Program-made: the position numbers and the translations under genes | Assembly (NCBI RefSeq): GCF_020745735.1 | Contig: NC_083411.1 | Coordinates: 34,927,263 to 34,991,262, forward strand | Reading direction: 5' to 3' | Length of the DNA: 64,000 nucleotides | Source: Hemiscyllium ocellatum | Lineage: Eukaryota | The notes under the pieces: generated by a model | Databases searched by the model: none | The model's input: the letters and a program-made list of their open reading frames with translations, nothing else | What the model was told of the DNA's origin: nothing | In this document: piece after piece, positions 1,067 to 62,791 of the stretch | How positions within the stretch are numbered: the first letter of the stretch is position 1 | Layout: each line of letters starts with the position of its first letter

Positions 1067-3243
1067 CAATAGAACATAGAACAATACAGCGCAGAACAGG
1101 CCCTTTGGCCCTCGATGTTGTGCCAACCTGTGAACTATTCTCAGCTAGTCCCCCTACACTATCCCAAAATCATCCATGTGCTTATCTAAGGATTGTTTAA
1201 ACCTCCCTAATGTGGCTGAGTTGACTACGTTAGCAGGTAGGGCATTCCACACCCTTACCACTCTCTGCGTAAAGAACCTGCCTCTGACATCTATCTTAAA
1301 CCTTTCACCCCTAAATTTGTAATTATGCCACCTCGTACACATTGACGTCATCATCCTAGGAAAAAGACTTTCACTGTCTACCCTATCTAATCCTCTGATC
1401 ATCTTGTATGTCTCTATCAAATCCCCTCTTAGCCTTCTTCTTTCCAATGAGAACAGGTTCAAGTCTCTCAGCCTTTCCTCATAAGACCTTCCCTCCAGAC
1501 CAGGCAACATCCTGGTAAATCTCCTCTGCACCTCCTCCAATGCTTCCACATCCTTCCCGAAATATGAGGGCCAGAACTGTACACAATATTCCAAGTGTGG
1601 CAGCACTAGCGTTAGTTGCAGCATGATATTGCAGCTCTGGAACTCAATCCCTCTACGAATGAAACCTATCACACCATATGCCTTCTTAACAACACTATCC
1701 ACCTGGGTGGCAACTTTCAGGGATCTATGTACGTGAACTCCAAGATCCCTCTGCACATTCACACTACCAAGAATCTTTGCATCACCCAGTACTCTGCCTT
1801 CCTGTTATTCTTCCAAAGTGCATCACCTCACATTTATTTGCATTGAACTCCATTTGCCTCTTCTCAGCCCAATTCTACAGTTTATCCAAGTCCCACTGCA
1901 ACCTGTAATATTCTTCCACACTGTCCACTACTCCACCAACCTTAGTGTCATCTGCAAATTTATTAATCAATCCACCTATGCCTACATCGAAGTCATTTAT
2001 AAAACTGACAAAGAGCAGTGGTTCCAAAATAGATGCTTGTGGCACATCACTAGTAACTGGACTCGAGGCTGAATATTTTCCATCAACCACCACTCGCTGC
2101 CTTCTTACAGAAAGCCAGTTTCTCATCCAAACTGCTAAATCACCCTTAATTCCATGCCTCTGCATTTTCTCCAACAGCTTACCATGTGGAAACTTATCAA
2201 AGGCTTTACTGAAGTCCATGTATACCACGTCAACTGCCCTACCCTCATTTGCATACTTGGTCACCTTCTCAAAAAACTCAATGAGGTTTGTGAGACATGA
2301 TCTGCCCTTGATGAAACCATGTTGACTATCTGAAATCAAACTATTGCTTGCTAGATGATTATAAATCTTATCTCTTATTATCCTTTCCAAAACCTTTCCC
2401 ACAGCAGAAGTAAGGCTCACTGGTCTATAATTGCCTGGGCCATCTTTACTTCCCTTCTTGAACAAGAGCACAACATTTGCAATCCTCTCGTCCTCTGGTA
2501 CCAAACATGTAGACAATGACAACTCAAATATCAAAACCAAAGGCTCTGCTATCTCCTCCCTAGCTTCCCAGAGAATCCTCAGATAAATCCCATCCACCCC
2601 AGGGGATTTGTCTACTTTAACTCCTTCTAGAATTGATAACACCTGTTCATAACTAACCTCGATCCTTTCTCGTCTAATATCTCATATTTCATTCTTCTCC
2701 TCAACAATATTCTCATTTAGCACCTCTCCTAACTCCACAGGGTCCACACTCAACTTCCCACTTCTGTCTTTGATTGGGCCTATTCCTAGCCTACTCATTC
2801 ATTTATTCCTCACATACCTATAGAAAGCTTTAGGGTTCTCCTTCATTCTATTTGCTGAAGATTGCTCGTGTCCTCTCTTTGCTCTTCTTAACTCTCTCTT
2901 TAAATCCTTCCTGGCTGATTTGTAACTCTCCATCGCCTCATCTGAACAATCTTGCCTCATCAACACATAAGCCTCCTTCTTCTTCGTAACAAGAGATGCA
3001 ATTTCTGTAGTAAACCACGGTTCCCTTACCGTATCACTTCCTCCCTGCCTGACAGGGACATATCTATCAAGGACACACAATATCTGTTCCTTAAACCTGC
3101 TCCACATTTCCATTCTCTGCATCCCCTGCATTTTGCTCCCCCATTCTATGCATCCTAATTCTTGCCTAATCGCATTATAATTGCCCTTGCCCTATCGATA
3201 ACTCTTGACCCGTGGCATGCACCTATCCCTTTCCATCACTAAA
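1067..3243 (-). mobile_element. CR1/HER1-type LINE, 5'-truncated, ORF2 RT broken
   Basis: ORFs 2799-3131, 1875-2642 ([41 protein letters not shown]) and 1154-1762 (PHLEYCVQFW). 3' stem-loop plus (GTTCTAT)n-like tail at ~1067-1125. Confidence 0.95.
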
Positions 3244-3271: not shown

Positions 3272-3445
3272 TGCAGGTCAGGCAGCCTCCAAATCAATGT
3301 TTAGGGCAAAAGCCCTTCATCAGGAAAGCCTTTCATTCTTGAAGGGCTTTTATCCGAAACGTCAATGTTCCTGTTCCTCGGATGCGGCTGTGCTTTTCCA
3401 GCACCGCACCCTTGGCTCTAATCTCCAGCATCTGCAGTACTTTTG
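3272..3445. mobile_element. Palindromic PLE terminal-repeat remnant with two inverted, degenerate hammerhead motifs
   Basis: agggcaaaagcccttcatcagga (minus-strand CTGATGAAGGGCTTTTGCCC) faces gaagggcttttatccgaaacgtc (plus). Flanks match the PLE ends at 16260-16357 and 47545-47641. Confidence 0.75.
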
Positions 3446-15291: not shown

Positions 15292-15775
15292 CTTAGAAGT
15301 GAAAGAAACAAACATATTTATTTGCTTTAGGGCTTCAGGAACCCAAATGGCCAATTTGACTTGTTGACCGTGTCTTCTTTCTAGCTGTTTTGTTACATAT
15401 TTGGTAAGCACATGGCCTCTGTACATCAATTCCTTTATTTCTTCCAATTTAGGGTCACCAAATCACTGAAGCCAGTATTCATAATCTAAACATTATAATT
15501 GATTCATTTACATTTCATACAATCTCTTAAAAAAAAGGTCATTTTAAAGATTTTTAGAAACAATAACAAATTCCCCCAAAACATTTCAAGAATTACAAAT
15601 TTTGCTTGCTGTTACTAATTCTGGTTTAAAGACCATCACACTCTGTACTTCACAACACACATTGGCTTTGTAATCAATACATTGAGTCTGTGCAATAAAA
15701 ACACATGAAACTCCATATATTTCAATTTCAAGTGTAAATGACATCTGCTCTGCACCATCAGAAATGGTCAAAAGT

Positions 15776-16357
15776 TTGTCCAGCAGGCTAAGATAAAAGG
15801 TAGGGAGGAGGGACTTGGGGGAGGGGCGTTAGGAATGCGATAGGTGGAAGGAGGTCAAGGTGAGAGTGATAGGCCAGAGTGGGGGTGGAGCGGAGAGATC
15901 AGGAAGAAGATTGCAGGTTAGGAAGGTGGTGCTGAGTTCAAGGGATTTGACTGAGACAAGGTGGGGGGAGGGGAAATGAGGAAACTGGAGAAATTTGAGT
16001 TCATCCATTGTGGTTGGAGGGTTCCTTGGCAGAAGATGAGGCGCTCTTCCTCCAGCCGTCGTGTTGCTATGGTCTGGCGATGGAAGAGTCCAAAGACCTG
16101 CATGTCCTTGGTAGAGTGGGAGGGGGAGTTAAAGTGTTGAGCCAAAGGATCGTTCCATTTCCAATGCCCCTCCCCCCAAGTCCCTCCTCCCTACCTTTTA
16201 TCTTAGCCTGCTGGACACACTTTCCTCATTCCTGAAGAAGGGCTCAATCCCAAAACATCGATTCTCCTGCTCCTTGGATGCTGCCTGACTTGCTGCGCTG
16301 TTCCAGCAACACATTTTCAGCTCTGATCTCCAGCATCTGCAGTCCTCACTTTCTCCT
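15776..16357. mobile_element. PLE 3' fragment with inverted terminal repeat
   Basis: 15776-16144 minus strand (ORF 15918-16145 AQHFNSPSHS..LEEERLIF, GIY-YIG C-terminus), then the same terminal repeat on plus 16155-16357 with a decayed hammerhead at 16228-16264. Confidence 0.85.
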
Positions 16358-19984: not shown

Positions 19985-22335
19985 TAGATCAGAGTGGTGC
20001 TGGAAAAGCACAGCAGTTCAGGCAGCATTCTAGGAGCAGGAACATCGACATTTCGGGTAAAAGCCCTTCATCAGGAATACAGACAGAGAGCCTGAAGGGT
20101 GGAAAGATAAATGAGAGGAGGGTGGGGGTGGGAAGAAAGTAGCATAGAGTACAATAAGTGAGTGGGGGAGGGTGGAGTGGATAGGTGGAAAGGAAGATAG
20201 GCAGGTAAGACAAGTCATGGGAACAGTGCTGAGCTGGAAGTTTGGAGCTGGGGTGAGGTGGGGGAAGGAGAAATGAGGAAACTGGTGAAGTCCACATTGA
20301 TGCCCTGGGGTTGAAGTGTTCCGAGATGGAAGATGAGGTGTTCTTCCTCCAGGCGAAGGGTGGTGAGGGAGCGGCAGTGAAGGAGGTCCAGGACCTCAAT
20401 TTCCTCAGTTGACTGGGAGGGGGAGTTGAAATGTTGGGCCACAGGGCGGTGTAGTTCATTGACAAGGGGTGTCCCAGGGATGTTCCCTAAAGTGCTCTGC
20501 TAGTAGGCGTCCAGTCTCCCCAATGTAGAGGAGACCGCATCAGGAGCAACGGATACAAGAAATGATATTGGTGGATGTGCAGGTAAAACTTTGATGGATG
20601 TGGAAGGCTCCTTTGGGGCCTTGGATGGAGGTGAGGGAGGAGGTGTGGGCACAGGTTTTGCAATTCCTGCGATGGCAGGGGAAGGTGCCAGAATGGGATG
20701 GTGGGTTGTTGGGGAGCGTGGACCTGACCAGGTAGTCATGAAGGGAACGGTCTTTGCGGAAGGCGGAAAGGGGTGGGGAGGGAAATATATCCCTGGTGGT
20801 GGGGTCCGTTTGGAGGTGGCGGAAATGTCAGCAGATGATTTGGATTATGCGAGGGTTGGTACGGTGGAAGGTGAGCACCAGGGGCATTCTGTCCTTGTTA
20901 CGGTTGGAGGAGTGGGGTCTGAGGGTGGAGGTGTGGGATGTGGATGAGATGCGTTGGAGGGCATCTTTAATCACGTGGGAAGGAAAATTGCGGTCTCTAA
21001 AGAAGGAGGCCATCTGGTGTGTTCTGTGATGGAACTGGTCCTCCTGGGAGCAGATACGGCAAAGGCGGAGGAATTGGGAATACGGAATGGCATTTTTGCA
21101 GGAGGTAGAGTGGGAAGAGGTATAAACCAGGTAGCTGTGGGAGTCGGTGGGTTTGTAAAAAATGTCGGTGTCAAGTCGGTTGTCATTAATGGAGATGGAG
21201 AGGTCCAGGAAGAGGAGGGAGGTGTCAGAGATGGTCCAGGTAAATTTAAGGTCAGGGTGGAATGTATTGGTGAAGTTGATGAATTGCTTAACCTCCTCGC
21301 GGGAGTATGAGGTGGCGTCAATGCAGTCATCAGTGTAGCGGAGAAAGAGGTGGGGAGTGATACTGGTGTAATTATGGAAGATGGACTATTCTATGTAGCC
21401 AACAAAGAGACAGGCATAGCTGGGGCCCATACGGGTGCCCATGGCTACCCCTTTGGTGTGGAGGAAGTGGGCGGATTCGAAGGAGAAATTGTTAAGGGTG
21501 AGGATCAGTTCGGCCAAACAAATGAGAGTGTCGGTAGAAGGGTACTGTTGGGCATGTCGGGAAAGGAAGAAACGGAGGGCTTGGAGGCCCTGGTCATGGC
21601 GGATGGAAGTGTAGAGGGACTGGATATCCATTGTGAAGATGAGGAGTTGGGGGCCAGGGAAATGGAAGTCTTGGTGGAGGTGGAGGGCATGGGTGGTGTC
21701 TCGAATGTATGTGGGGAGTTCCTGGACTAGGGGGCATAGGACAGTGTCGAGATAGGTAGAGATGAGTTCAGTGGGGCAGGATCATGTTGAGACAATTGAT
21801 CAGCCAGGATGGTCAGGCTTGTGGATCTTGGGAAGGAGCTAGAACCGGGCAGTGCGGGGTTCCCGGACTATGAGATTGGATGCTGTGGGTGGGAGATCTC
21901 CCGAGGTGATGAGATTCTGTATGGTCTGGAAGATGATGGTTTGGTGATGGAGGGTGGGGTCATGGTCGGGGTGGGGGGGGGGGGGGGGGGGTGGTAGGAA
22001 GAGGTGTCCTTGAGTTGGCGTCTGGCTTCCGCGGTGTACAGGTCAGAGAGCCAGACTACCACTGCGCCCCCTTTATCTGCTGGCTTGATGGTGAGGTCAG
22101 GATTGGAGCAGAGGGATTGGAGGGCTGCACATTGTGAGGGTGAGAGGTTGGAGTGGAGGAGGGTTGAGGCGGTTAATGTCCCGGAGGCAGTTAGAAATGA
22201 AGAGGTCGAGGGCGGATAATAGGCCAGCAGGGGCTGTCCAGGTGGATGCAATGTGTTGGAGGTGGGCGAAGGGGTCCTCGGAAGGTTGGTGGGAGTCCTG
22301 ATTGTAAAAGTAAGCTCGGAGGCGGAGGCGGCAGA
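19985..22335 (-). mobile_element. Penelope-like element, Neptune-type (RT, Cys linker, GIY-YIG), 5'-truncated and frameshifted
   Basis: IKPADKGGAVVVW (21868-22251), MDIQSLYTSI...GVAMGTRMGPSYA (21386-21631), RYTDD (~21330), FPCHRRNCKTC (~20642-20689), CIRCS*CGLLYIGETG (~20510-20580), 3' terminal repeat with hammerhead. Confidence 0.92.
20044..20078 (-). ncRNA. Type I hammerhead ribozyme motif (family A) in the PLE terminal repeat
   Basis: Minus strand ATTC-CTGATGA-A-GGGCTTTTACCC-GAAA-T-GTC-GATG: core intact, GUC triplet present. Confidence 0.7.
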
Positions 22336-46620: not shown

Positions 46621-46927
46621 GGATAACAGTGAGCCAGGGAGAAAGAAAAGCTAATTATAAGGACCATCAATAGGTGAAAATGGGTTGGCTGTAATGAAAG
46701 TAACCCATGTGATGACAGGGCCTGGGGTGTGGGGGTAATTAAAGGACATGAAACATGGTGTTCAGGCACTATAAGCATTGAACTTGATATTGAGTCCTGA
46801 AGATTGCAGAGTTCTCAAGTGGAAAATGAAATGCTGTTCTTCCAGTTTGCACTGACCCTCACTGTTGTACTACAACAGGCCCGAGACAGCTGCTGGCCCG
46901 AGAACAGGGTGACATATTGAAGGGTCA

Positions 46928-47641
46928 AAGCTGAAAAATATGTTGCTGGAAAAGCACAGCAGGTCAGCCAGCATCCAAGGAGCAGGAGAACAGCACCTCA
47001 TCTTCTGCCTAGGAACACTCCAACCACAAGGGATGAATGCAGATTTCTCCAGCTTCCTCATTTCCCCTCCCCCCACCTTATCTCAGTCCCAACCCTCGGA
47101 CTCGGCACCGCCTTCTTGACCTGCAATCTTCTTCCTGACCTCTCCGTCCCCACCCCCCCTCCGGCTTATCACCCTCACCTTAACCTCCTTCCACCTATCG
47201 CATTCCCAACCCCCCTCCCCCAAGTCCCTCCTACCTACCTTTTATCTACTGTGAATCCTCTTGCAAGGATGCCTTCCTTGAAGAAGCTCTCTTCCTACCT
47301 CTACAAGGATTTCAGTGAGTCACTCTCTCACTGCACCCCCCAGGTCATTTCCTCTGCACAGAAGCTCTTCAGCCACGTTAAGATTCCTGATGAAGGGCTT
47401 ATGCCCGAAACGGCGAATTTCCTGTTCCTTGGATGCTGCCTGACCTGCTGCGCTTTTCCAGCAACACATTTTCAGCTACCTTTTATCTTAGCCTGCTTGG
47501 CACACTCTCCTCATTCCTGAAGAAAGGTTTTTGCCCGAAACGTCGAATCTCCTGCTCCTTGGATGCTGCCTGACCTGCTGCGCTTTTCTAGCAGCACATT
47601 TTTCAGCTCTGATCTCCAGCATCTGCAGTCCTCACTTTCTC
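46928..47641 (+). mobile_element. Young PLE fragment with inverted 5' piece and tandem terminal repeats; ~15-bp TSD
   Basis: 46928-46990 inverted repeat end; GIY-YIG C-terminus; two repeat copies; flanks CATATTGAAG(G/T)GTCA at 46913-46927 / 47642-47656. Confidence 0.85.
47381..47550 (+). ncRNA. Tandem type I hammerhead ribozyme motifs (family A)
   Basis: AGATTC-CTGATGA-A-GGGCTTATGCCC-GAAACG (47381-47412) and ATTC-CTGAAGA...GAAAC-GTC-GAATCT (47513-47550). Confidence 0.75.
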
Positions 47642-48382
47642 CATATTGAAGTGTCAGGCAACCAGAAGCTCAGGATCATTTTTGCAGACAGAATGTAGGT
47701 GTACAACAAAGTGGCAACCAGTCTGTGTTCATTTCCCCAATGCAGAGGCGACCACACTGTGAACAGCAAATACAGTAGATTAGATTGAGTGAAATGCAGG
47801 TAAATCGCTGCTTCACGTGGATAATATGTCTGAGGTGTTGGATAGTCAGGAGGGCTGAAGTAATTGGGCATGTACCACAGCTCCCTAATGTGATTGAAAG
47901 GCTATCCCAAACAAATGCACTGGGTTCCCAAATTCAGAGGCAGTTGTTCATTTAATTGGCCAGTGGTCTCCACAAAATGCGCTTGTCTGAACATCGGCTG
48001 AATATTCTTGGTCCAATATTTCAAACAAGAAAAATGTTGACATGGTTGAAATAAAATGTTGATTTTTAAAACTTTTTACTTGATATCTTTGCATTACTGT
48101 AACACAAGCTCTAGATGGTCATTAGAGCATTTGTCTGTTTACTATTTTGTGCAATGATAAAATTGTGAATCTAGAAACAGCAGACCAGTTCGATCTGGAC
48201 TGTTCTGCTCTTTCAGTACAGTGTTAATGGTGGATTCCTATTGGGAATAATATGGGATGGTAAAAGCACAGTCACTGCATAGGTTGAAGCATTTCTCTGA
48301 TGCTGAATGAAATCGGAGTATCAAAATCATACTGCCTACATGCTACCTGTAGCAACTGCAACAAAGCACACACGTCTGTTTT

Positions 48383-54482: not shown

Positions 54483-56188
54483 ATAGACTCAGAGTAATCG
54501 AGATGTACAGCACGGAAACAGACCCTTCGGTCCAACTCGTCCATGCCAACCAGATATCCCAACCCATTCTAGTCCCACCTGCCAGCATCTGGCCCATATC
54601 CCTCCAAACCTTTCCTATTCATTTATCTATCCAGATGCCTTTTAAATGTTGCAATTGTACTAGCCTCCGCCACTTCTTCTGGCAGCTCATTCCACAAACA
54701 TACCACCCTCTAAGTGAAAAAGATGCCCCTTAGGTCTCTTTTACATTTTTCCCCTCTCACCCTAAACCTATGCCCTCTAGTTCTGGATTCCCCCACAACA
54801 GGGAAAAGACTTTGTCTATTTATCCTATGCATTCCCCTCATGATTTTATAAACCTCTATAACGTCATCCCTCAGCCTCCGATGGTCCAGGGAATACAGTC
54901 CCAGCCTATTCAACCTCTCCCTATAGCTCAAATCCACATACCCTGGCAAAATCCTTATAAATCTTTTCTGAACCCTTTCAATTTTCACAACAGCTTTCCA
55001 ATTGGAAAGAGACCAGAAGTGCATGCAGTATTCTAACAGTGGCCTAATCAATGTCCTGTACAGCCGCAACATGACTTCCCAACTCCTGTACTCAATACTC
55101 TGACCAATAAAAGAAAGCATACCAAACACCTTCTTCACTATCCTATCTACCTGTGACTTCACTTTCAAGGAGCTATGAACATGCACTCCAAGGTCTCTTT
55201 GTTGAGCAACACCCCCTAGGACTTTACCATTAAGTGTGTAAGTCCTGCTAAAATTTGCTTTTCCAAAATGCTGCTCCTCGCATTTATCTAAATTAAATTC
55301 ATCTGCCACTTCTCAACCATCTGATCAATATCCCACTGTAATCTGAGGTAATCTTTTTTGCTTTCCACTACACCTCCAATTTTGGTGTCATCAGCAAACT
55401 TACTAAATATACATCTTATGCTCGCCTCTAAATAATTTACATAAATGACAAAAAGTAATGGATCCAATACCGATTCTTGTGGCATTCCACTGGCCACAGG
55501 TTTCCAGTCTGAAAAACAACCCTCCAGCGCCACCCTCCGTCTTCTACCTTTGAACCAGTTTTGTATCCAAATGGCGAGTTCTCCTTGTATTCCATGCGAT
55601 CTAATCTTGCTAACCAGTCTCACACGGGAAACCTTGTCAAACTTCTTATTGAAGTCCATATAGATCATATCTACCATTCTGCCCTCATCAATCCTCTTTG
55701 TTACTTCATCAAAATACTCAATCAAATTTGTGAGACATGATTTCTCACGGATAAAGCCATGTTGACTATGCCTAATCAGTCCTTGCCTTTCCAAATGAAT
55801 GTACATCCTGTCCCTCAGGATTCCCTCTAACAACTTTCCCACCAGCGATGTCAGGCTCACTGGTCTCTCGTTCCCTGGCTTGTCCTTATCACCTTTCTTA
55901 AACATTGACACCATGCTAGTCAACGTCCAGTCTTCCGGCACCTCACCTGTGACTATCGATGATATCTCACTAAGAGGCCCAGCAAACACTTCTCCAGCTT
56001 CCCACAGAGTTCTAGGGTACACCTGATCAGGTCCTGGGGATTTATCCACTTTTATGCATTTCAAGACATCCAGTATTTCCTCCTCTGTAATATGGACATT
56101 TTTCAAGATGTCACCATCAATTTCCCTACATTCTATACCTTCCATGTCCTTTTCCACAGTAAATACTGATGCAAAAGTAAATACTGAT
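54483..56188 (-). mobile_element. CR1 LINE, 5'-truncated RT
   Basis: ORFs 55288-56211 (QHGF..SCLTNL, YMDF, KFADDTK) and 54710-55309; 3' UTR at 54483-54620. Confidence 0.95.
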
Positions 56189-56214
56189 ACCAATGGAATA
56201 GACAAGCACACCTT

Positions 56215-59887: not shown

Positions 59888-62791
59888 CTATACTAGCCCA
59901 ATAACTTCCAAATGCCTATCCAATGCCCGCTTAAATGAACATAAAGAAGGAGAGTTCACCACTGATACGGGCAGGGCATTCCATGAACTCACAACCCGCT
60001 GTGTGAAGAATCTACCCCTAACATCTGTCCTATACCTACCACCCCTTAATTTAAAGCTATGTCCCCTAGTAACACCTGACTCCATCATCGGTAAAAGGTT
60101 CTTAGTATCTACCCTATCTAAACCCCTAATCATCTTATACACTTCTATCAGATCTCCCCTAAACCTTCTCTTCTCCAATGAGAACAGCCCCAAGTGCCTC
60201 AGCCTTTCCTCGTAAGATTTTCCTACCATTCCAGGCAACATCCTGGTAAACCTCCTCTGCACTCGTTCTAAAGCTTCCACATCCTTCCTATAGTATGGCG
60301 ACCAAAACTGCACACAATACTCCAGATGAGGCCTCACCAGAGTCTTATACAACTGCAACATGACCTCAGGACTCCGGAACTCAATTCCTCTGCCAATAAA
60401 GCCCAGTACACCATATGCCTTCCTCACAGCACTATTTACCTGGGTGGCAACTTTCAGAGATCTGTGCACATAGACACCAAGATCCCTCTGCTCATCCACA
60501 CTACCAAGTAGCCTACCATTAGCCCAGTAATCCATCATCTTGTTATTCCTACCAAAGTGAACGACTTCGCACTTAGCTACATTGAATTCCATTTGCCACA
60601 TTTCCGCCCAGCTCTGCAACTTATCTATATCCCGCTGTAACCTACCACTTCCTTCCTCACTATCCACAACTCCACCGACTTTTGTGTCATCCGCAAACTT
60701 GCTTACCCAGCTTTCAAGTCCTTCCTCTAGATCATTTATAAAGATAACAAAAAGCAATGGTCCCAAAACAGATCCTTGTGGTACACCGCTAGTAACTGCG
60801 CTCCAAGATGAACATAATCCATCAACTACTACCCTCTGTCTCCTTCCAGCCAGCCAATTCCTAATCCAAACCTCTAATGTATCCTCAATGCCATACCTCC
60901 GAAGTTTTAGCATTAGCCTACCATGGGGAACCTTATCGAACGCCTTACTAAAATCCATATACACAACATCTACTGCTTTACCCTCATCCACTTCCTTAGT
61001 CACCTTCTCAAAGAACTCATCAAGGTTTGTGAGGCACGACCTGCCCTTCACAAAACCATGCTGGCTATCCCTGATCACGTTATTCCTACCCAGATGTTCA
61101 TAAATCTTATCCCTTACCATTCTCTCTAAGACTTTGCCCACCACTGAAGTCAGACTCACTGGCCTATAGTTACTAGGGCTATCCCTACTCCCTTTCTTGA
61201 ACAATGGGACCACATTCGCTATCCTCCAGTCCTCTGGTACTATTCCCGTTGACAATGACGACATAAAAATCCAGGCCAATGGCTCTGCTATCTCCTCCCT
61301 AGCTTCCCATAGGATCCTGGGGTAAATGCCATCAGGCCCAGGAGACTTATCTATATTCATCCTTTCCAATATTCCCAAAACCTCTTCCCTGCATATTTCC
61401 AGGGCATCCATTCTAATTATTTGTGATTCCATATTCACATCAGCAACAGTGTCCTGTTCCTGAGTGAATACTGATGAAAAGTACTGATTTAATGTCTCTC
61501 CAATCTCCTCCGCCTCCACACACAACTTCCCACTACTATCCTTGACTGGACCGATACCTACCCTAGTCATCCTTTTATTCTTGACATACCTATAGAAAGC
61601 CTTTGGGTTTTCCCTAATCCTACCAGCTAAAGACTTTTCATGTCCCCTTCTCGCTTCTCTTAGCTCCCTCTTTAGCTCCTTCCTGGCTACCTTATAACTC
61701 TCAATCGCCCCTACTGAACCTTCACGCCTCATCTTTACATATGCCGCCTTCTTCCCTTTCACAAGGGACTCCAATTCCTTACTAAACCACGGCTGCCTCA
61801 CAAGGCCCTTTACACCATGCCTGACTGGTACATACCTATCGAGGACACGCAGTAGCTGCTCCTTGAACAATCCCCACATCTCATTAGTGTTCTTCTCTTG
61901 AAGCCTGTTTTTCCAATCCACACAACCTAAGTCATGCCTCACTGCATCATAATTTCCCTGCCCCCAGCTATAGCTCTTGCCCTGCGGCGCACGATTATCC
62001 CTCTCCATCACTAAAATAAAAGTCACCGAGTTGTGGTCACTGTCCCCGAAGTGCTCACCTACCTCCAAGTCTAACACCTGGCCTGGTTCATTACCTAGAA
62101 CCAAATCCAATATAGCCTACCCTCTTGTTGGCCTGTCGACATATTGTGTCAGGAAACCCTCCTGCACACATTGTACAAACACCGACCCATCTAATGAACT
62201 CGAGCTATAGCTCTCCCAGTCAATATCTGGGAAGTTAAAGTCCCCCATAACAACCACCCTGCTACCTTCACTCTTTTCCTGAATCATCCTCGCAATATTA
62301 TCCTCTACTTCTCTAGGACTATTAGGAGGCCTGTAGAAAACGCCTAACAGGGTGACCTCACCTTTCCTATTTCTAACCTCAGCCCAAACTACCTCAGATG
62401 GCAAGTCCTCTTCCATCGTCCATTCCACTGCTGTGATACTGTCTTTGACAAGTAATGCCACGCCTCCCCCTTTTTTACCCCCATGTCTGATCCTACTAAA
62501 ACATTTGAACCCTGGAACGTGCAACAGCCATTCTTGTCCCTGTTCTACCCACGTCTCTGTAATGGCCACAACATCGAAGTCCCAGGTACCAACCCACGCT
62601 GCAAGTTCACCTACCTTATTCCTTATACTTCTGGCATTGAAGTATACACACTTCAATCCACCTTTCTGGTTACAGGCACCCTCCTTAGAGATCGCTGCAT
62701 TATTCCTAACCTCCCTACACTCAAGGTCCTGTACCCTAAAGCTACAGTCCTGGTTCCCATGCCCCCGCGGAGTTAGTTTAAACCCTCCCAA
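59888..62791 (-). pseudogene. CR1 ORF2 (APE endonuclease plus reverse transcriptase) with one in-frame premature TAG at 62117-62119
   Basis: ORFs 62117-62791 and 59888-62110 are in frame: [49 protein letters not shown] and FADD are all present. Confidence 0.95.

What the first reader, a model, noticed from the sequence alone, without database searches (positions are those of the whole stretch)
47381..47550. Two damaged tandem hammerheads complement into one canonical ribozyme
Seen: copy 1 has a perfect core (CUGAUGA 47387-93, extra A, stem II GGGC/GCCC, GAAA 47407-10) but its cleavage triplet is GGC. Copy 2, 130 nt downstream, has a weakened stem II but an intact GUC (47542-44). Pairing copy 1 with copy 2 gives a 6-bp stem I (AGAUUC/GAAUCU) and a 3-bp stem III (ACG/CGU), a complete type I hammerhead predicted to cut after C47544. 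Established: PLE terminal repeats carry minimal type I hammerheads with a palindromic stem III that act as tandem dimers. Inference: this locus may still self-cleave if transcribed on the plus strand.
Basis: partly seen in the sequence, partly recalled or inferred. Interest (0 to 1): 0.85.

Follow-up and report, generated by a model that had tools for sequence, protein, structure and literature searches.

The report
Nested decayed Penelope hammerhead ribozyme relics
Two worn-out copies of the small hammerhead ribozyme motif carried by Penelope-like retrotransposons ended up 130 bases apart because one short element inserted into another; on paper they make one complete ribozyme, but this is the expected outcome for this known dimer-type motif and it is unlikely to be active.

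Summary
Both motifs are minimal type I hammerheads of the kind described for Penelope-like elements (PLEs). They have the CUGANGA and GAAA boxes, an unpaired A after A9, no loop 3 and a palindromic ACGU helix III.

The pair is not a tandem duplication or a pair of terminal repeats.
- Copy 1 lies in a 228-nt insert (47248-47475) flanked by an exact 13-bp target-site duplication.
- The insert sits in the 3' UTR of an older 5'-truncated PLE copy (46923-47642), which has its own 9-bp duplication and carries copy 2.

In a double hammerhead, each active site combines the core of one copy with the substrate strand of the other. Both lesions (U16.1G in copy 1, G10.1A in copy 2) hit the same composite site, so the other site is simply unhit. 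At this level of decay that happens in roughly 40-75% of such pairs.

Folding with 30 nt or more of extra flank puts copy 1's core in a 10-bp upstream hairpin (p 0.9). The hammerhead-compatible fold is then 10-22 kcal/mol above the minimum. Intact PLE mini-hammerheads are already weak in vitro.

This scan's first-stage readers flagged the same family in 323 notes elsewhere in this genome. Verdict: an ordinary relic of a known kind.

The parts
46914..46922 (.). Left copy of the 9-bp target-site duplication ATATTGAAG of the outer PLE insertion
   Evidence: Same 9-mer directly flanks both ends of the outer element
46925..46989 (-). Inverted fragment of the family's post-hammerhead 'tail', joined to the 5' end of the outer copy (the typical PLE inverted 5'-truncated partner)
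   Evidence: 65 nt, 91% complementary to 47548-47612; this arrangement is described for PLEs in PMC8557442
46994..47119 (+). Remnant of the C-terminal end of a PLE ORF (HLIFCLGTLQPQGMNADFSSFLISPPP..., stop at 47117-19)
   Evidence: Translation. It is 73% identical in protein to the C-terminus of the decayed RT / GIY-YIG-like ORF at 20218-22300(-). An RT-proximal piece of that ORF matches Atlas clusters carrying RVT_1 + HTH_animal + GIY-YIG (score 0.97)
47120..47247 (+). 3' UTR of the outer PLE copy, up to the nested insertion point
   Evidence: 46988-47247 is 88% identical to 16049-15791(-)
47235..47247 (.). Left copy of the 13-bp target-site duplication CTACCTTTTATCT of the nested insert
   Evidence: Exact 13-nt repeat with 47476-47488. 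Removing the insert plus one repeat restores continuous homology to the 16k(+) copy
47248..47382 (+). 5' part of the nested insert, 135 nt of unknown origin
   Evidence: No significant similarity to any family copy in either orientation, no other match in the window, nothing in the scan index
47362..47400 (+). Predicted competing hairpin: 47362-47371 pairs with 47391-47400, sequestering U7-A9, the unpaired A and the 5' strand of stem II of copy 1
   Evidence: 10 bp, pair probabilities 0.74-0.90 in the fold of 47340-47650; also in the MFE and centroid
47381..47420 (+). Hammerhead copy 1 (in the nested insert): intact core and stem II, U16.1 to G at 47413, so its own site is dead
47421..47475 (+). 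Shortened tail of the nested insert
   Evidence: The insert's family homology runs from 47383 and ends at ...CAG(CT), next to the right target-site repeat
47476..47488 (.). Right copy of the 13-bp target-site duplication
47489..47512 (+). Continuation of the outer element's 3' UTR up to its own hammerhead
   Evidence: 47476-47642 is 90% identical to 16191-16356 (alignment)
47513..47550 (+). Hammerhead copy 2 (outer element): A7 (neutral), G10.1 to A (A.C mismatch), C10.4 to U (wobble). The substrate strand CGUC is intact, with the predicted scissile bond after C47544
47551..47642 (+). Full-length tail of the outer element, ending ...CACTTTCTCC
   Evidence: Same end as the 16k copy
47643..47651 (.). 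Right copy of the outer 9-bp target-site duplication ATATTGAAG

Best explanation
The locus is a relic of two successive Penelope-like element (PLE) insertions. First, a 5'-truncated PLE 3' end inserted at ATATTGAAG. It carried the last ~40 codons of the ORF, the 3' UTR, a minimal hammerhead and a tail, and was preceded by a short inverted tail fragment. Later, a 228-nt element carrying a related hammerhead inserted in the same orientation into the UTR of the first, 35 nt upstream of the resident hammerhead, duplicating CTACCTTTTATCT. Both hammerheads then decayed, or were already imperfect. PLE mini-hammerheads have no helix III of their own and can form an active site only by domain swapping with a second copy. 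Each potential site is therefore core(A) + substrate(B). Here both disabling changes fall in the site core(2) + substrate(1), so core(1) + substrate(2) keeps all consensus positions. That is an accident of where two mutations fell, not a maintained function. The composite is most likely inactive or barely active in the cell. Shown: motif anatomy, family membership, nested insertion, predicted competing folds. Inferred: lack of activity and order of events.
For: Anatomy and coordinates. Dispersed family with consensus ATTC-CTGATGA-A-GGGC-TTTT-GCCC-GAAA-CGTC-GATT. PLE context: the ORF remnant is 73% identical to the C-terminus of a decayed ORF at 20.2-22.3 kb(-). By eye that ORF reads RYTDD and LLYIGET in its translation, and one piece matches RVT_1 / HTH_animal / GIY-YIG clusters. 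Nested insertion: exact 13-bp flanking repeat and restored continuity with the 16k copy. Outer 9-bp duplication. No period-130 array by TRF, and the segments before the two copies are unrelated. No sign of constraint: 6 of 38 differences in the hammerhead part against 3 of 52 in the tail. Chance estimate for one unhit composite site: 0.25-0.51 per site, 0.43-0.76 for at least one of two. Folding: (overall z-score 0.24, no better than shuffles). Helix I in 84 distinct unrelated instances of the same core is only about 4 bp, so pairs 5-6 here are chance extras. Genomic arrangement of the class: 98 of 120 loci hold a single motif, 19 adjacent pairs are all head-to-head inverted, and only 2 are direct. 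Literature: features and low activity of PLE mini-hammerheads (PMC4209133); protein-dependent cleavage, dispensable for insertion, with no RNA-seq reads beginning or ending at the site (PMC11167929); inverted/tandem PLE structures and tails (PMC8557442).
Against: The composite site does meet every consensus position of a hammerhead, with a perfect 6-bp helix I, so activity cannot be excluded by sequence. Nearest-neighbour folding ignores the tertiary stabilisation of the core and any protein chaperone, and I could not run a known active dimeric hammerhead through the same calculation as a control. The origin of the insert's first 135 nt is unknown, so its classification as a PLE-derived element rests on its hammerhead/tail part and its target-site duplication. 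The family consensus comes from only six copies in this window. Transcription of the locus is untested.
Confidence: 0.8

Rival explanations
1. One reading: the two damaged copies form one working double-hammerhead site, and plus-strand transcripts self-cleave after C47544.
For: All core positions, the G10.1-C11.1 pair, A15.1-U16.1 and C17 are present in the composite. Helix I has 6 bp, helix II 4 bp and helix III 3 bp. With the limits 47371-47560, helix I has probability about 0.9. Dimeric action is established for hammerheads with a weak helix III (PMC6155905; PMC7229834).
Against: In that same fold, G5-G8 pair with CGUC of the site, which is an inactive extension. With more flank, helix I is about 0.01, helix II of copy 1 about 0.08-0.12 and helix III about 0, and a 10-bp upstream hairpin (p 0.9) holds the core. 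Helix III is one pair shorter than in an intact dimer and closes a 128-nt loop. There is no loop-loop tertiary contact. Intact PLE mini-hammerhead dimers are weak in vitro, and the Anolis one needs PLE protein. A single cut would not release a unit. There is no evidence of conservation or of transcription.
Confidence: 0.1
2. The pair is a true short tandem (a local duplication, a template-switch product of one insertion event, or a 130-nt retrozyme-like unit), not a later nested insertion.
For: Same orientation, 130-nt spacing and 90% identity over 96 nt. Both copies share GAAU at helix I positions 1.1-1.4, unlike the other window copies. PLE reverse transcriptases are thought to make complex tandem/inverted products.
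Against: Homology does not cover a whole 130-nt period, and the 35 nt before each copy are unrelated. TRF finds nothing. An exact 13-bp direct repeat sits precisely at the two homology breakpoints, and excision restores the canonical sequence, which is the signature of an insertion. The insert brings 135 nt absent from other family copies.
Confidence: 0.08
3. The motifs are chance matches to a short consensus and not hammerhead-derived at all.
For: Rfam finds no hammerhead at the gathering threshold or at E up to 10.
Against: The Rfam result is uninformative here; by my reading its hammerhead models expect a helix III, which this class lacks. The pattern occurs 100-fold above expectation. The motif lies at a fixed place in a repeat family next to a PLE ORF end. 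The same core with the same unpaired A, and with covarying helix I between families, occurs in over 120 unrelated contigs.
Confidence: 0.01

Closest known systems
Minimal type I hammerheads (min-HHR) of metazoan Penelope-like elements (Cervera and De la Pena 2014, PMC4209133)
   Same: [quoted passage not shown]
   Different: This is a decayed pair created by nested insertion, not the two terminal repeats of one element. Copy 1 has lost U16.1 and copy 2 has lost the G10.1-C11.1 pair. The family seen here is, according to other first-stage notes, from a shark genome; I did not find it specifically described in the papers read.
Double hammerhead of newt satellite 2 and avocado sunblotch viroid transcripts (Forster et al. 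1988, as summarised in PMC6155905)
   Same: Two copies in one RNA extend a too-short helix III.
   Different: Those are true tandem units of one repeat with both sites intact and with demonstrated cleavage. Here only one of two sites is intact, the spacer is heterogeneous and nothing has been demonstrated.
Metazoan non-LTR retrozymes (Cervera and De la Pena 2020, PMC7229834; Li et al. 2026 preprint, 10.64898/2026.07.22.740005)
   Same: Short non-autonomous hammerhead-bearing units related to PLE terminal regions, with target-site duplications longer than 4 bp. Vertebrate versions work better as dimers.
   Different: Retrozymes are head-to-tail arrays of a complete 150-450 nt unit with canonical type I hammerheads, and are expressed as circular RNAs. 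Here there is no full-period repeat and a single cut could not release a monomer.
Poseidon PLE of Anolis carolinensis (PAc) hammerhead (Frangieh et al. 2024, PMC11167929)
   Same: [quoted passage not shown] Insertions end in a 'tail' downstream of the hammerhead, as do the copies here, which end about 60-100 nt past the site.
   Different: PAc is an active element whose hammerhead overlaps the start of its ORF and was shown to cleave with protein present. This locus is a truncated relic.

Membership tests
PLE minimal type I hammerhead (min-HHR) | Conserved boxes C3-U4-G5-A6-N7-G8-A9 and G12-A13-A14 | tested here: met
   CTGATGA/GAAA in copy 1 and CTGAAGA/GAAA in copy 2
PLE minimal type I hammerhead (min-HHR) | Unpaired nucleotide between A9 and 10.1 | tested here: met
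   A47394 and A47524. This is a family hallmark, and is A in 83 of 84 distinct unrelated instances
PLE minimal type I hammerhead (min-HHR) | G10.1-C11.1 closing pair of helix II | tested here: inconclusive
   Met in copy 1 and in the family consensus. Not met in copy 2 (A.C)
PLE minimal type I hammerhead (min-HHR) | No helix III or loop 3; palindromic 15.2-16.2, so that A-C-G-U pairs with a second copy | tested here: met
   GAAA-CG-TC in copy 2 and in the consensus. Copy 1 reads ACGG
PLE minimal type I hammerhead (min-HHR) | U16.1 and H17 at the cleavage site | tested here: inconclusive
   Copy 2 has GUC; copy 1 has GGC, which fails
PLE minimal type I hammerhead (min-HHR) | Location in the terminal non-coding region of an element encoding RT plus a GIY-YIG endonuclease | tested here: met
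   Copy 2 lies about 400 nt (about 170 nt without the insert) downstream of a PLE ORF end. A relative at 20-22.3 kb has ORF pieces that match RVT_1 / HTH_animal / GIY-YIG clusters. The GIY-YIG assignment of the last piece alone is weak (score 0.86)
PLE minimal type I hammerhead (min-HHR) | Self-cleavage after H17 | not testable with these tools
   Needs transcription and cleavage assays. Predicted folds disfavour the active form
Rfam Hammerhead families | Score at or above the gathering threshold of an Rfam hammerhead covariance model | tested here: not met
   No hit at the gathering threshold over the window, and none at E up to 10 over 47200-47750. This is expected, because the class lacks helix III
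Metazoan non-LTR retrozyme | Head-to-tail array of a complete repeat unit, each unit with a hammerhead | tested here: not met
   TRF finds no array. Only 96 of 130 nt are shared, and the rest is explained by a nested insertion with a 13-bp duplication
PLE pseudo-LTR pair | Two direct repeats flanking an RT-EN ORF, formed by partial tandem insertion | tested here: not met
   Both hammerheads lie 3' of the same truncated ORF remnant and no ORF lies between them

The most novel reading that the evidence does not exclude
A nested insertion of two independently decayed PLE fragments has by accident assembled one functional composite hammerhead. With help from a PLE protein or host chaperone, it would cut any host transcript running through 47381-47550 on the plus strand. 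That would show that dead mini-hammerheads can be revived in pairs by transposition.
Probability: 0.05. Interest if true: 0.4.

Novelty: already known. Interest (0 to 1): 0.12.

Why it matters
It matters little as a discovery. The motif class, its dimeric logic and its link to Penelope-like elements were published in 2014 and later, and this genome holds very many such copies. Three points are useful.

- 'Complementation' between neighbouring damaged mini-hammerheads follows directly from the domain-swapped double-hammerhead topology. It should not be scored as surprising elsewhere in this genome.
- The two clean nested target-site duplications (9 bp and 13 bp) document the PLE habit of inserting into PLE sequence. 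They also define a 228-nt hammerhead-bearing insert whose 5' half is unassigned.
- The folding results show how much a predicted helix I depends on the chosen transcript limits.

Tried and rejected
- **Rfam.** No family was found at the gathering threshold over the whole window. At E up to 10 over 47200-47750 there was no hammerhead, only chance miRNA, snoRNA and lncRNA matches.
- **Tandem Repeats Finder.** A run over 45-50 kb found no array at the locus.
- **Strict and fuzzy descriptor searches.** Searches of the window for further hammerhead families found only copy 1 and the 20k copy. The other family copies are too decayed.
- **The 135-nt 5' part of the insert.** I looked for a hidden inverted hammerhead or UTR homology with local alignments against all family copies in both orientations, using shuffled controls. 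All z-scores were at or below 2.3 and none was convincing. A look-up by sequence in the scan's notes returned nothing. A faint resemblance of 47359-47375 to the reverse complement of the hammerhead 5' half is noted but not supported statistically.
- **Pfam on the decayed PLE ORF pieces.** This gave only a sub-threshold RVT_1 match. The GIY-YIG domain is split by a frameshift and was not detected. The Atlas look-up of the C-terminal piece was weak (0.86).
- **Metagenome scans.** The first scan, with a stricter pattern, found nothing. The second found more than 120 contigs that share only the 26-nt core with this family. They therefore serve as class-level comparison and not as relatives of this element.
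- **Not attempted.** I did not try to identify the host gene or the transcription status of the locus. No tool here holds this genome's annotation or RNA data.

Full report
**1. The observation**

- Copy 1 reads AGATTC-CTGATGA-A-GGGC-TTAT-GCCC-GAAA-CGGC-GAATTT (47381-47420).
- Copy 2 reads TCATTC-CTGAAGA-A-AGGT-TTTT-GCCC-GAAA-CGTC-GAATCT (47511-47550).
- The two share about 96 nt at 90% identity, 130 nt apart.
- A loose hammerhead pattern occurs twice in the window against 0.02 expected.
Helix I (47381-86 with 47545-50) is six Watson-Crick pairs. Helix II of copy 1 is four pairs. Helix III (47410-12 with 47541-43) is three pairs, followed by a G.A mismatch.

**2. What the motif is**

BLAST of the locus against the window shows a dispersed repeat family, with further copies at 16191-16356(+), 20078-19994(-), 3333-3441(+), 3326-3273(-) and a fragment at 42627-59. 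Their alignment (A1) gives the consensus ATTC-CTGATGA-A-GGGC-TTTT-GCCC-GAAA-CGTC-GATT, followed by a conserved tail.

This matches feature by feature the minimal type I hammerhead that Cervera and De la Pena (2014, PMC4209133) defined for metazoan Penelope-like elements:
- the two conserved boxes;
- an unpaired nucleotide between A9 and 10.1;
- the G10.1-C11.1 pair;
- no helix III or loop 3;
- a palindromic 15.2-16.2, so that ACGU can pair only with a second copy.

The A at position 7 of copy 2 is harmless, since by established hammerhead knowledge position 7 is variable. Rfam finds nothing; by my reading this is because its hammerhead models expect a helix III.

**3. The element context**

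On the plus strand, 46994-47119 encodes HLIFCLGTLQPQGMNADFSSFLISPPP...stop. This is 73% identical to the C-terminus of a decayed ORF at 20218-22300(-). Read by eye, that ORF's translation shows RYTDD and LLYIGET motifs. One of its pieces matches Atlas clusters carrying RVT_1, HTH_animal and GIY-YIG at score 0.97. Pfam itself gives only a sub-threshold RVT_1 hit.

In the 20k copy, the hammerhead lies about 170-200 nt downstream of the ORF end, in the same orientation. So the family is the 3' terminal region of a PLE.

The 65-nt inverted tail fragment at 46925-46989 abuts the 5' end of the truncated copy. This is the inverted 5'-truncated partner described as typical of PLE insertions (PMC8557442). 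The whole composite 46923-47642 is flanked by a 9-bp direct repeat, ATATTGAAG.

**4. The pair is a nested insertion, not a tandem**

- Homology between the copies covers only the hammerhead and part of the tail. The 35 nt before copy 2 are canonical family UTR, while those before copy 1 are unrelated.
- Tandem Repeats Finder sees no array.
- The exact 13-mer CTACCTTTTATCT occurs at 47235-47247 and at 47476-47488, precisely at the two breakpoints of homology.
- Deleting 47248-47488 restores an uninterrupted match to the 16k(+) copy.

The 228 nt between the repeats (135 nt of unassigned sequence, hammerhead 1 and a shortened tail) are therefore a later insertion with a 13-bp target-site duplication. 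It landed 35 nt upstream of the resident hammerhead 2.

The 135-nt part has no significant similarity to any family copy in either orientation, and no other match in the window.

**5. Why 'complementation' is expected**

In a double hammerhead, helix III and helix I are both swapped between copies. One site is core(1) + substrate(2) and the other is core(2) + substrate(1). The dimeric mechanism is summarised in PMC6155905, and the topology follows from strand order.

Relative to the consensus, copy 1 has one disabling change, U16.1 to G, on its substrate strand. Copy 2 has one, G10.1 to A, in its core side, plus a neutral A7 and a wobble. Both changes hit the same composite site and the other site is simply unhit.

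With 5-10% per-site decay over about 13 essential positions, a given composite site stays unhit with probability 0.25-0.51. At least one of two stays unhit with probability 0.43-0.76.

The hammerhead part has diverged more between the copies (6 of 38) than the tail (3 of 52). This is the opposite of what constraint would give, although the difference is not significant (p = 0.16).

The fifth and sixth helix I pairs come partly from the insert's unique flank. In 84 distinct unrelated instances of the same core, helix I is paired only at positions 1-4 (0.94, 0.89 with C-G/G-C covariation, 0.71, 0.56), and positions 5-7 are not paired above shuffled expectation.

**6. Would it cleave?**

ViennaRNA results by transcript limits:

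| Transcript limits | Helix I probability | Other features | Hammerhead-constrained fold vs MFE |
|---|---|---|---|
| 30-470 nt more flank | 0.01 or less | Helix II of copy 1 at 0.08-0.12 | 10-22 kcal/mol above |

- A 10-bp hairpin, 47362-47371 with 47391-47400 (pair probabilities 0.74-0.90), occupies U7-A9, the unpaired A and the 5' strand of stem II. It lies upstream, so it would form first during transcription.
- In longer transcripts, the inverted tail at 46925-46989 can pair with 47548-47612, overlapping helix I.
- The region as a whole folds no better than shuffles (z = 0.24).

Caveats: nearest-neighbour models ignore the tertiary core and any proteins, and I had no tool-derived sequence of a proven dimeric hammerhead to use as a control.

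Independent of folding:
- Intact PLE mini-hammerhead dimers cleave weakly, and mostly at non-physiological Mg2+.
- The Anolis PLE hammerhead cleaved only with PLE protein, was dispensable for insertion, and no RNA-seq reads began or ended at its site.
- A single cut could not release a unit.

**7. Class-level comparison from elsewhere**

I assume these are host DNA in host-associated samples, but the source was not checked. They share only the 26-nt core with the family here, so they are other families of the same class.

Of the 120 contigs, 98 carry a single motif. All 19 adjacent pairs are head-to-head on opposite strands, and only 2 pairs are direct, at 534 and 554 nt. This agrees with the 2014 description. 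It shows that close direct pairs are the exception, in line with an accidental origin here.

**8. Verdict**

- The kind of feature is already known.
- First-stage notes of this scan list 323 entries on hammerhead/Penelope elements in this same genome, which they call a shark. Those notes are unchecked and were used only as context.

Noticed in passing
window 3273-3441: Two decayed family hammerheads head-to-head on opposite strands, (-) 3326-3273 and (+) 3333-3441, with their cores only about 10 nt apart. This is the same (-,+) orientation as all 19 inverted pairs seen in unrelated metagenome contigs.
   Followed up: partly
window 15773-16356: Another fold-back PLE relic. A (-) strand copy (ORF end plus UTR, 16155 down to about 15773, breaking off inside the first hammerhead box) is joined head-to-head at 16155/16156 to a (+) strand UTR-hammerhead-tail copy (16156-16356). 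That hammerhead has lost both CpGs (CAAAACATC).
   Followed up: partly
window 19994-22300 (-): A longer decayed PLE: RT-like and GIY-YIG-like ORF pieces broken by three stops and at least one frameshift, followed by a hammerhead at 20074-20047 with GAAATGTC (CpG decay). No upstream terminal repeat was found in the window.
   Followed up: partly
window 47248-47382: 135 nt at the 5' end of the nested insert have no detectable relative in the window or in the scan index. 47359-47375 faintly resembles the reverse complement of a hammerhead 5' half, but this is not statistically supported.
   Followed up: yes
window 1875-2642(-), 55288-56211(-), 59888-62110(-): Three ORFs with clear RVT_1 matches (E 2e-22, 4e-18, 6e-35). 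These are non-PLE retroelement reverse transcriptases; other notes on this window call them CR1.
   Followed up: no
L001-L120 (metagenome contigs, mostly Ga0126336-Ga0126343 and OFE*/OFH* records): The same 26-nt mini-hammerhead core (bulged A, GGG/CCC stem, ACGU) is abundant in contigs of a few metagenome projects, in at least three flank families (e.g. TCCA...TGGA and CCTGA...TCGAA). This is presumably animal host DNA; the host was not identified.
   Followed up: partly
L068:762-1323, L083:1449-2030: These are the only two direct-orientation hammerhead pairs among the 120 contigs, spaced 534 and 554 nt apart. They are candidates for true tandem (retrozyme-like) units.
   Followed up: no
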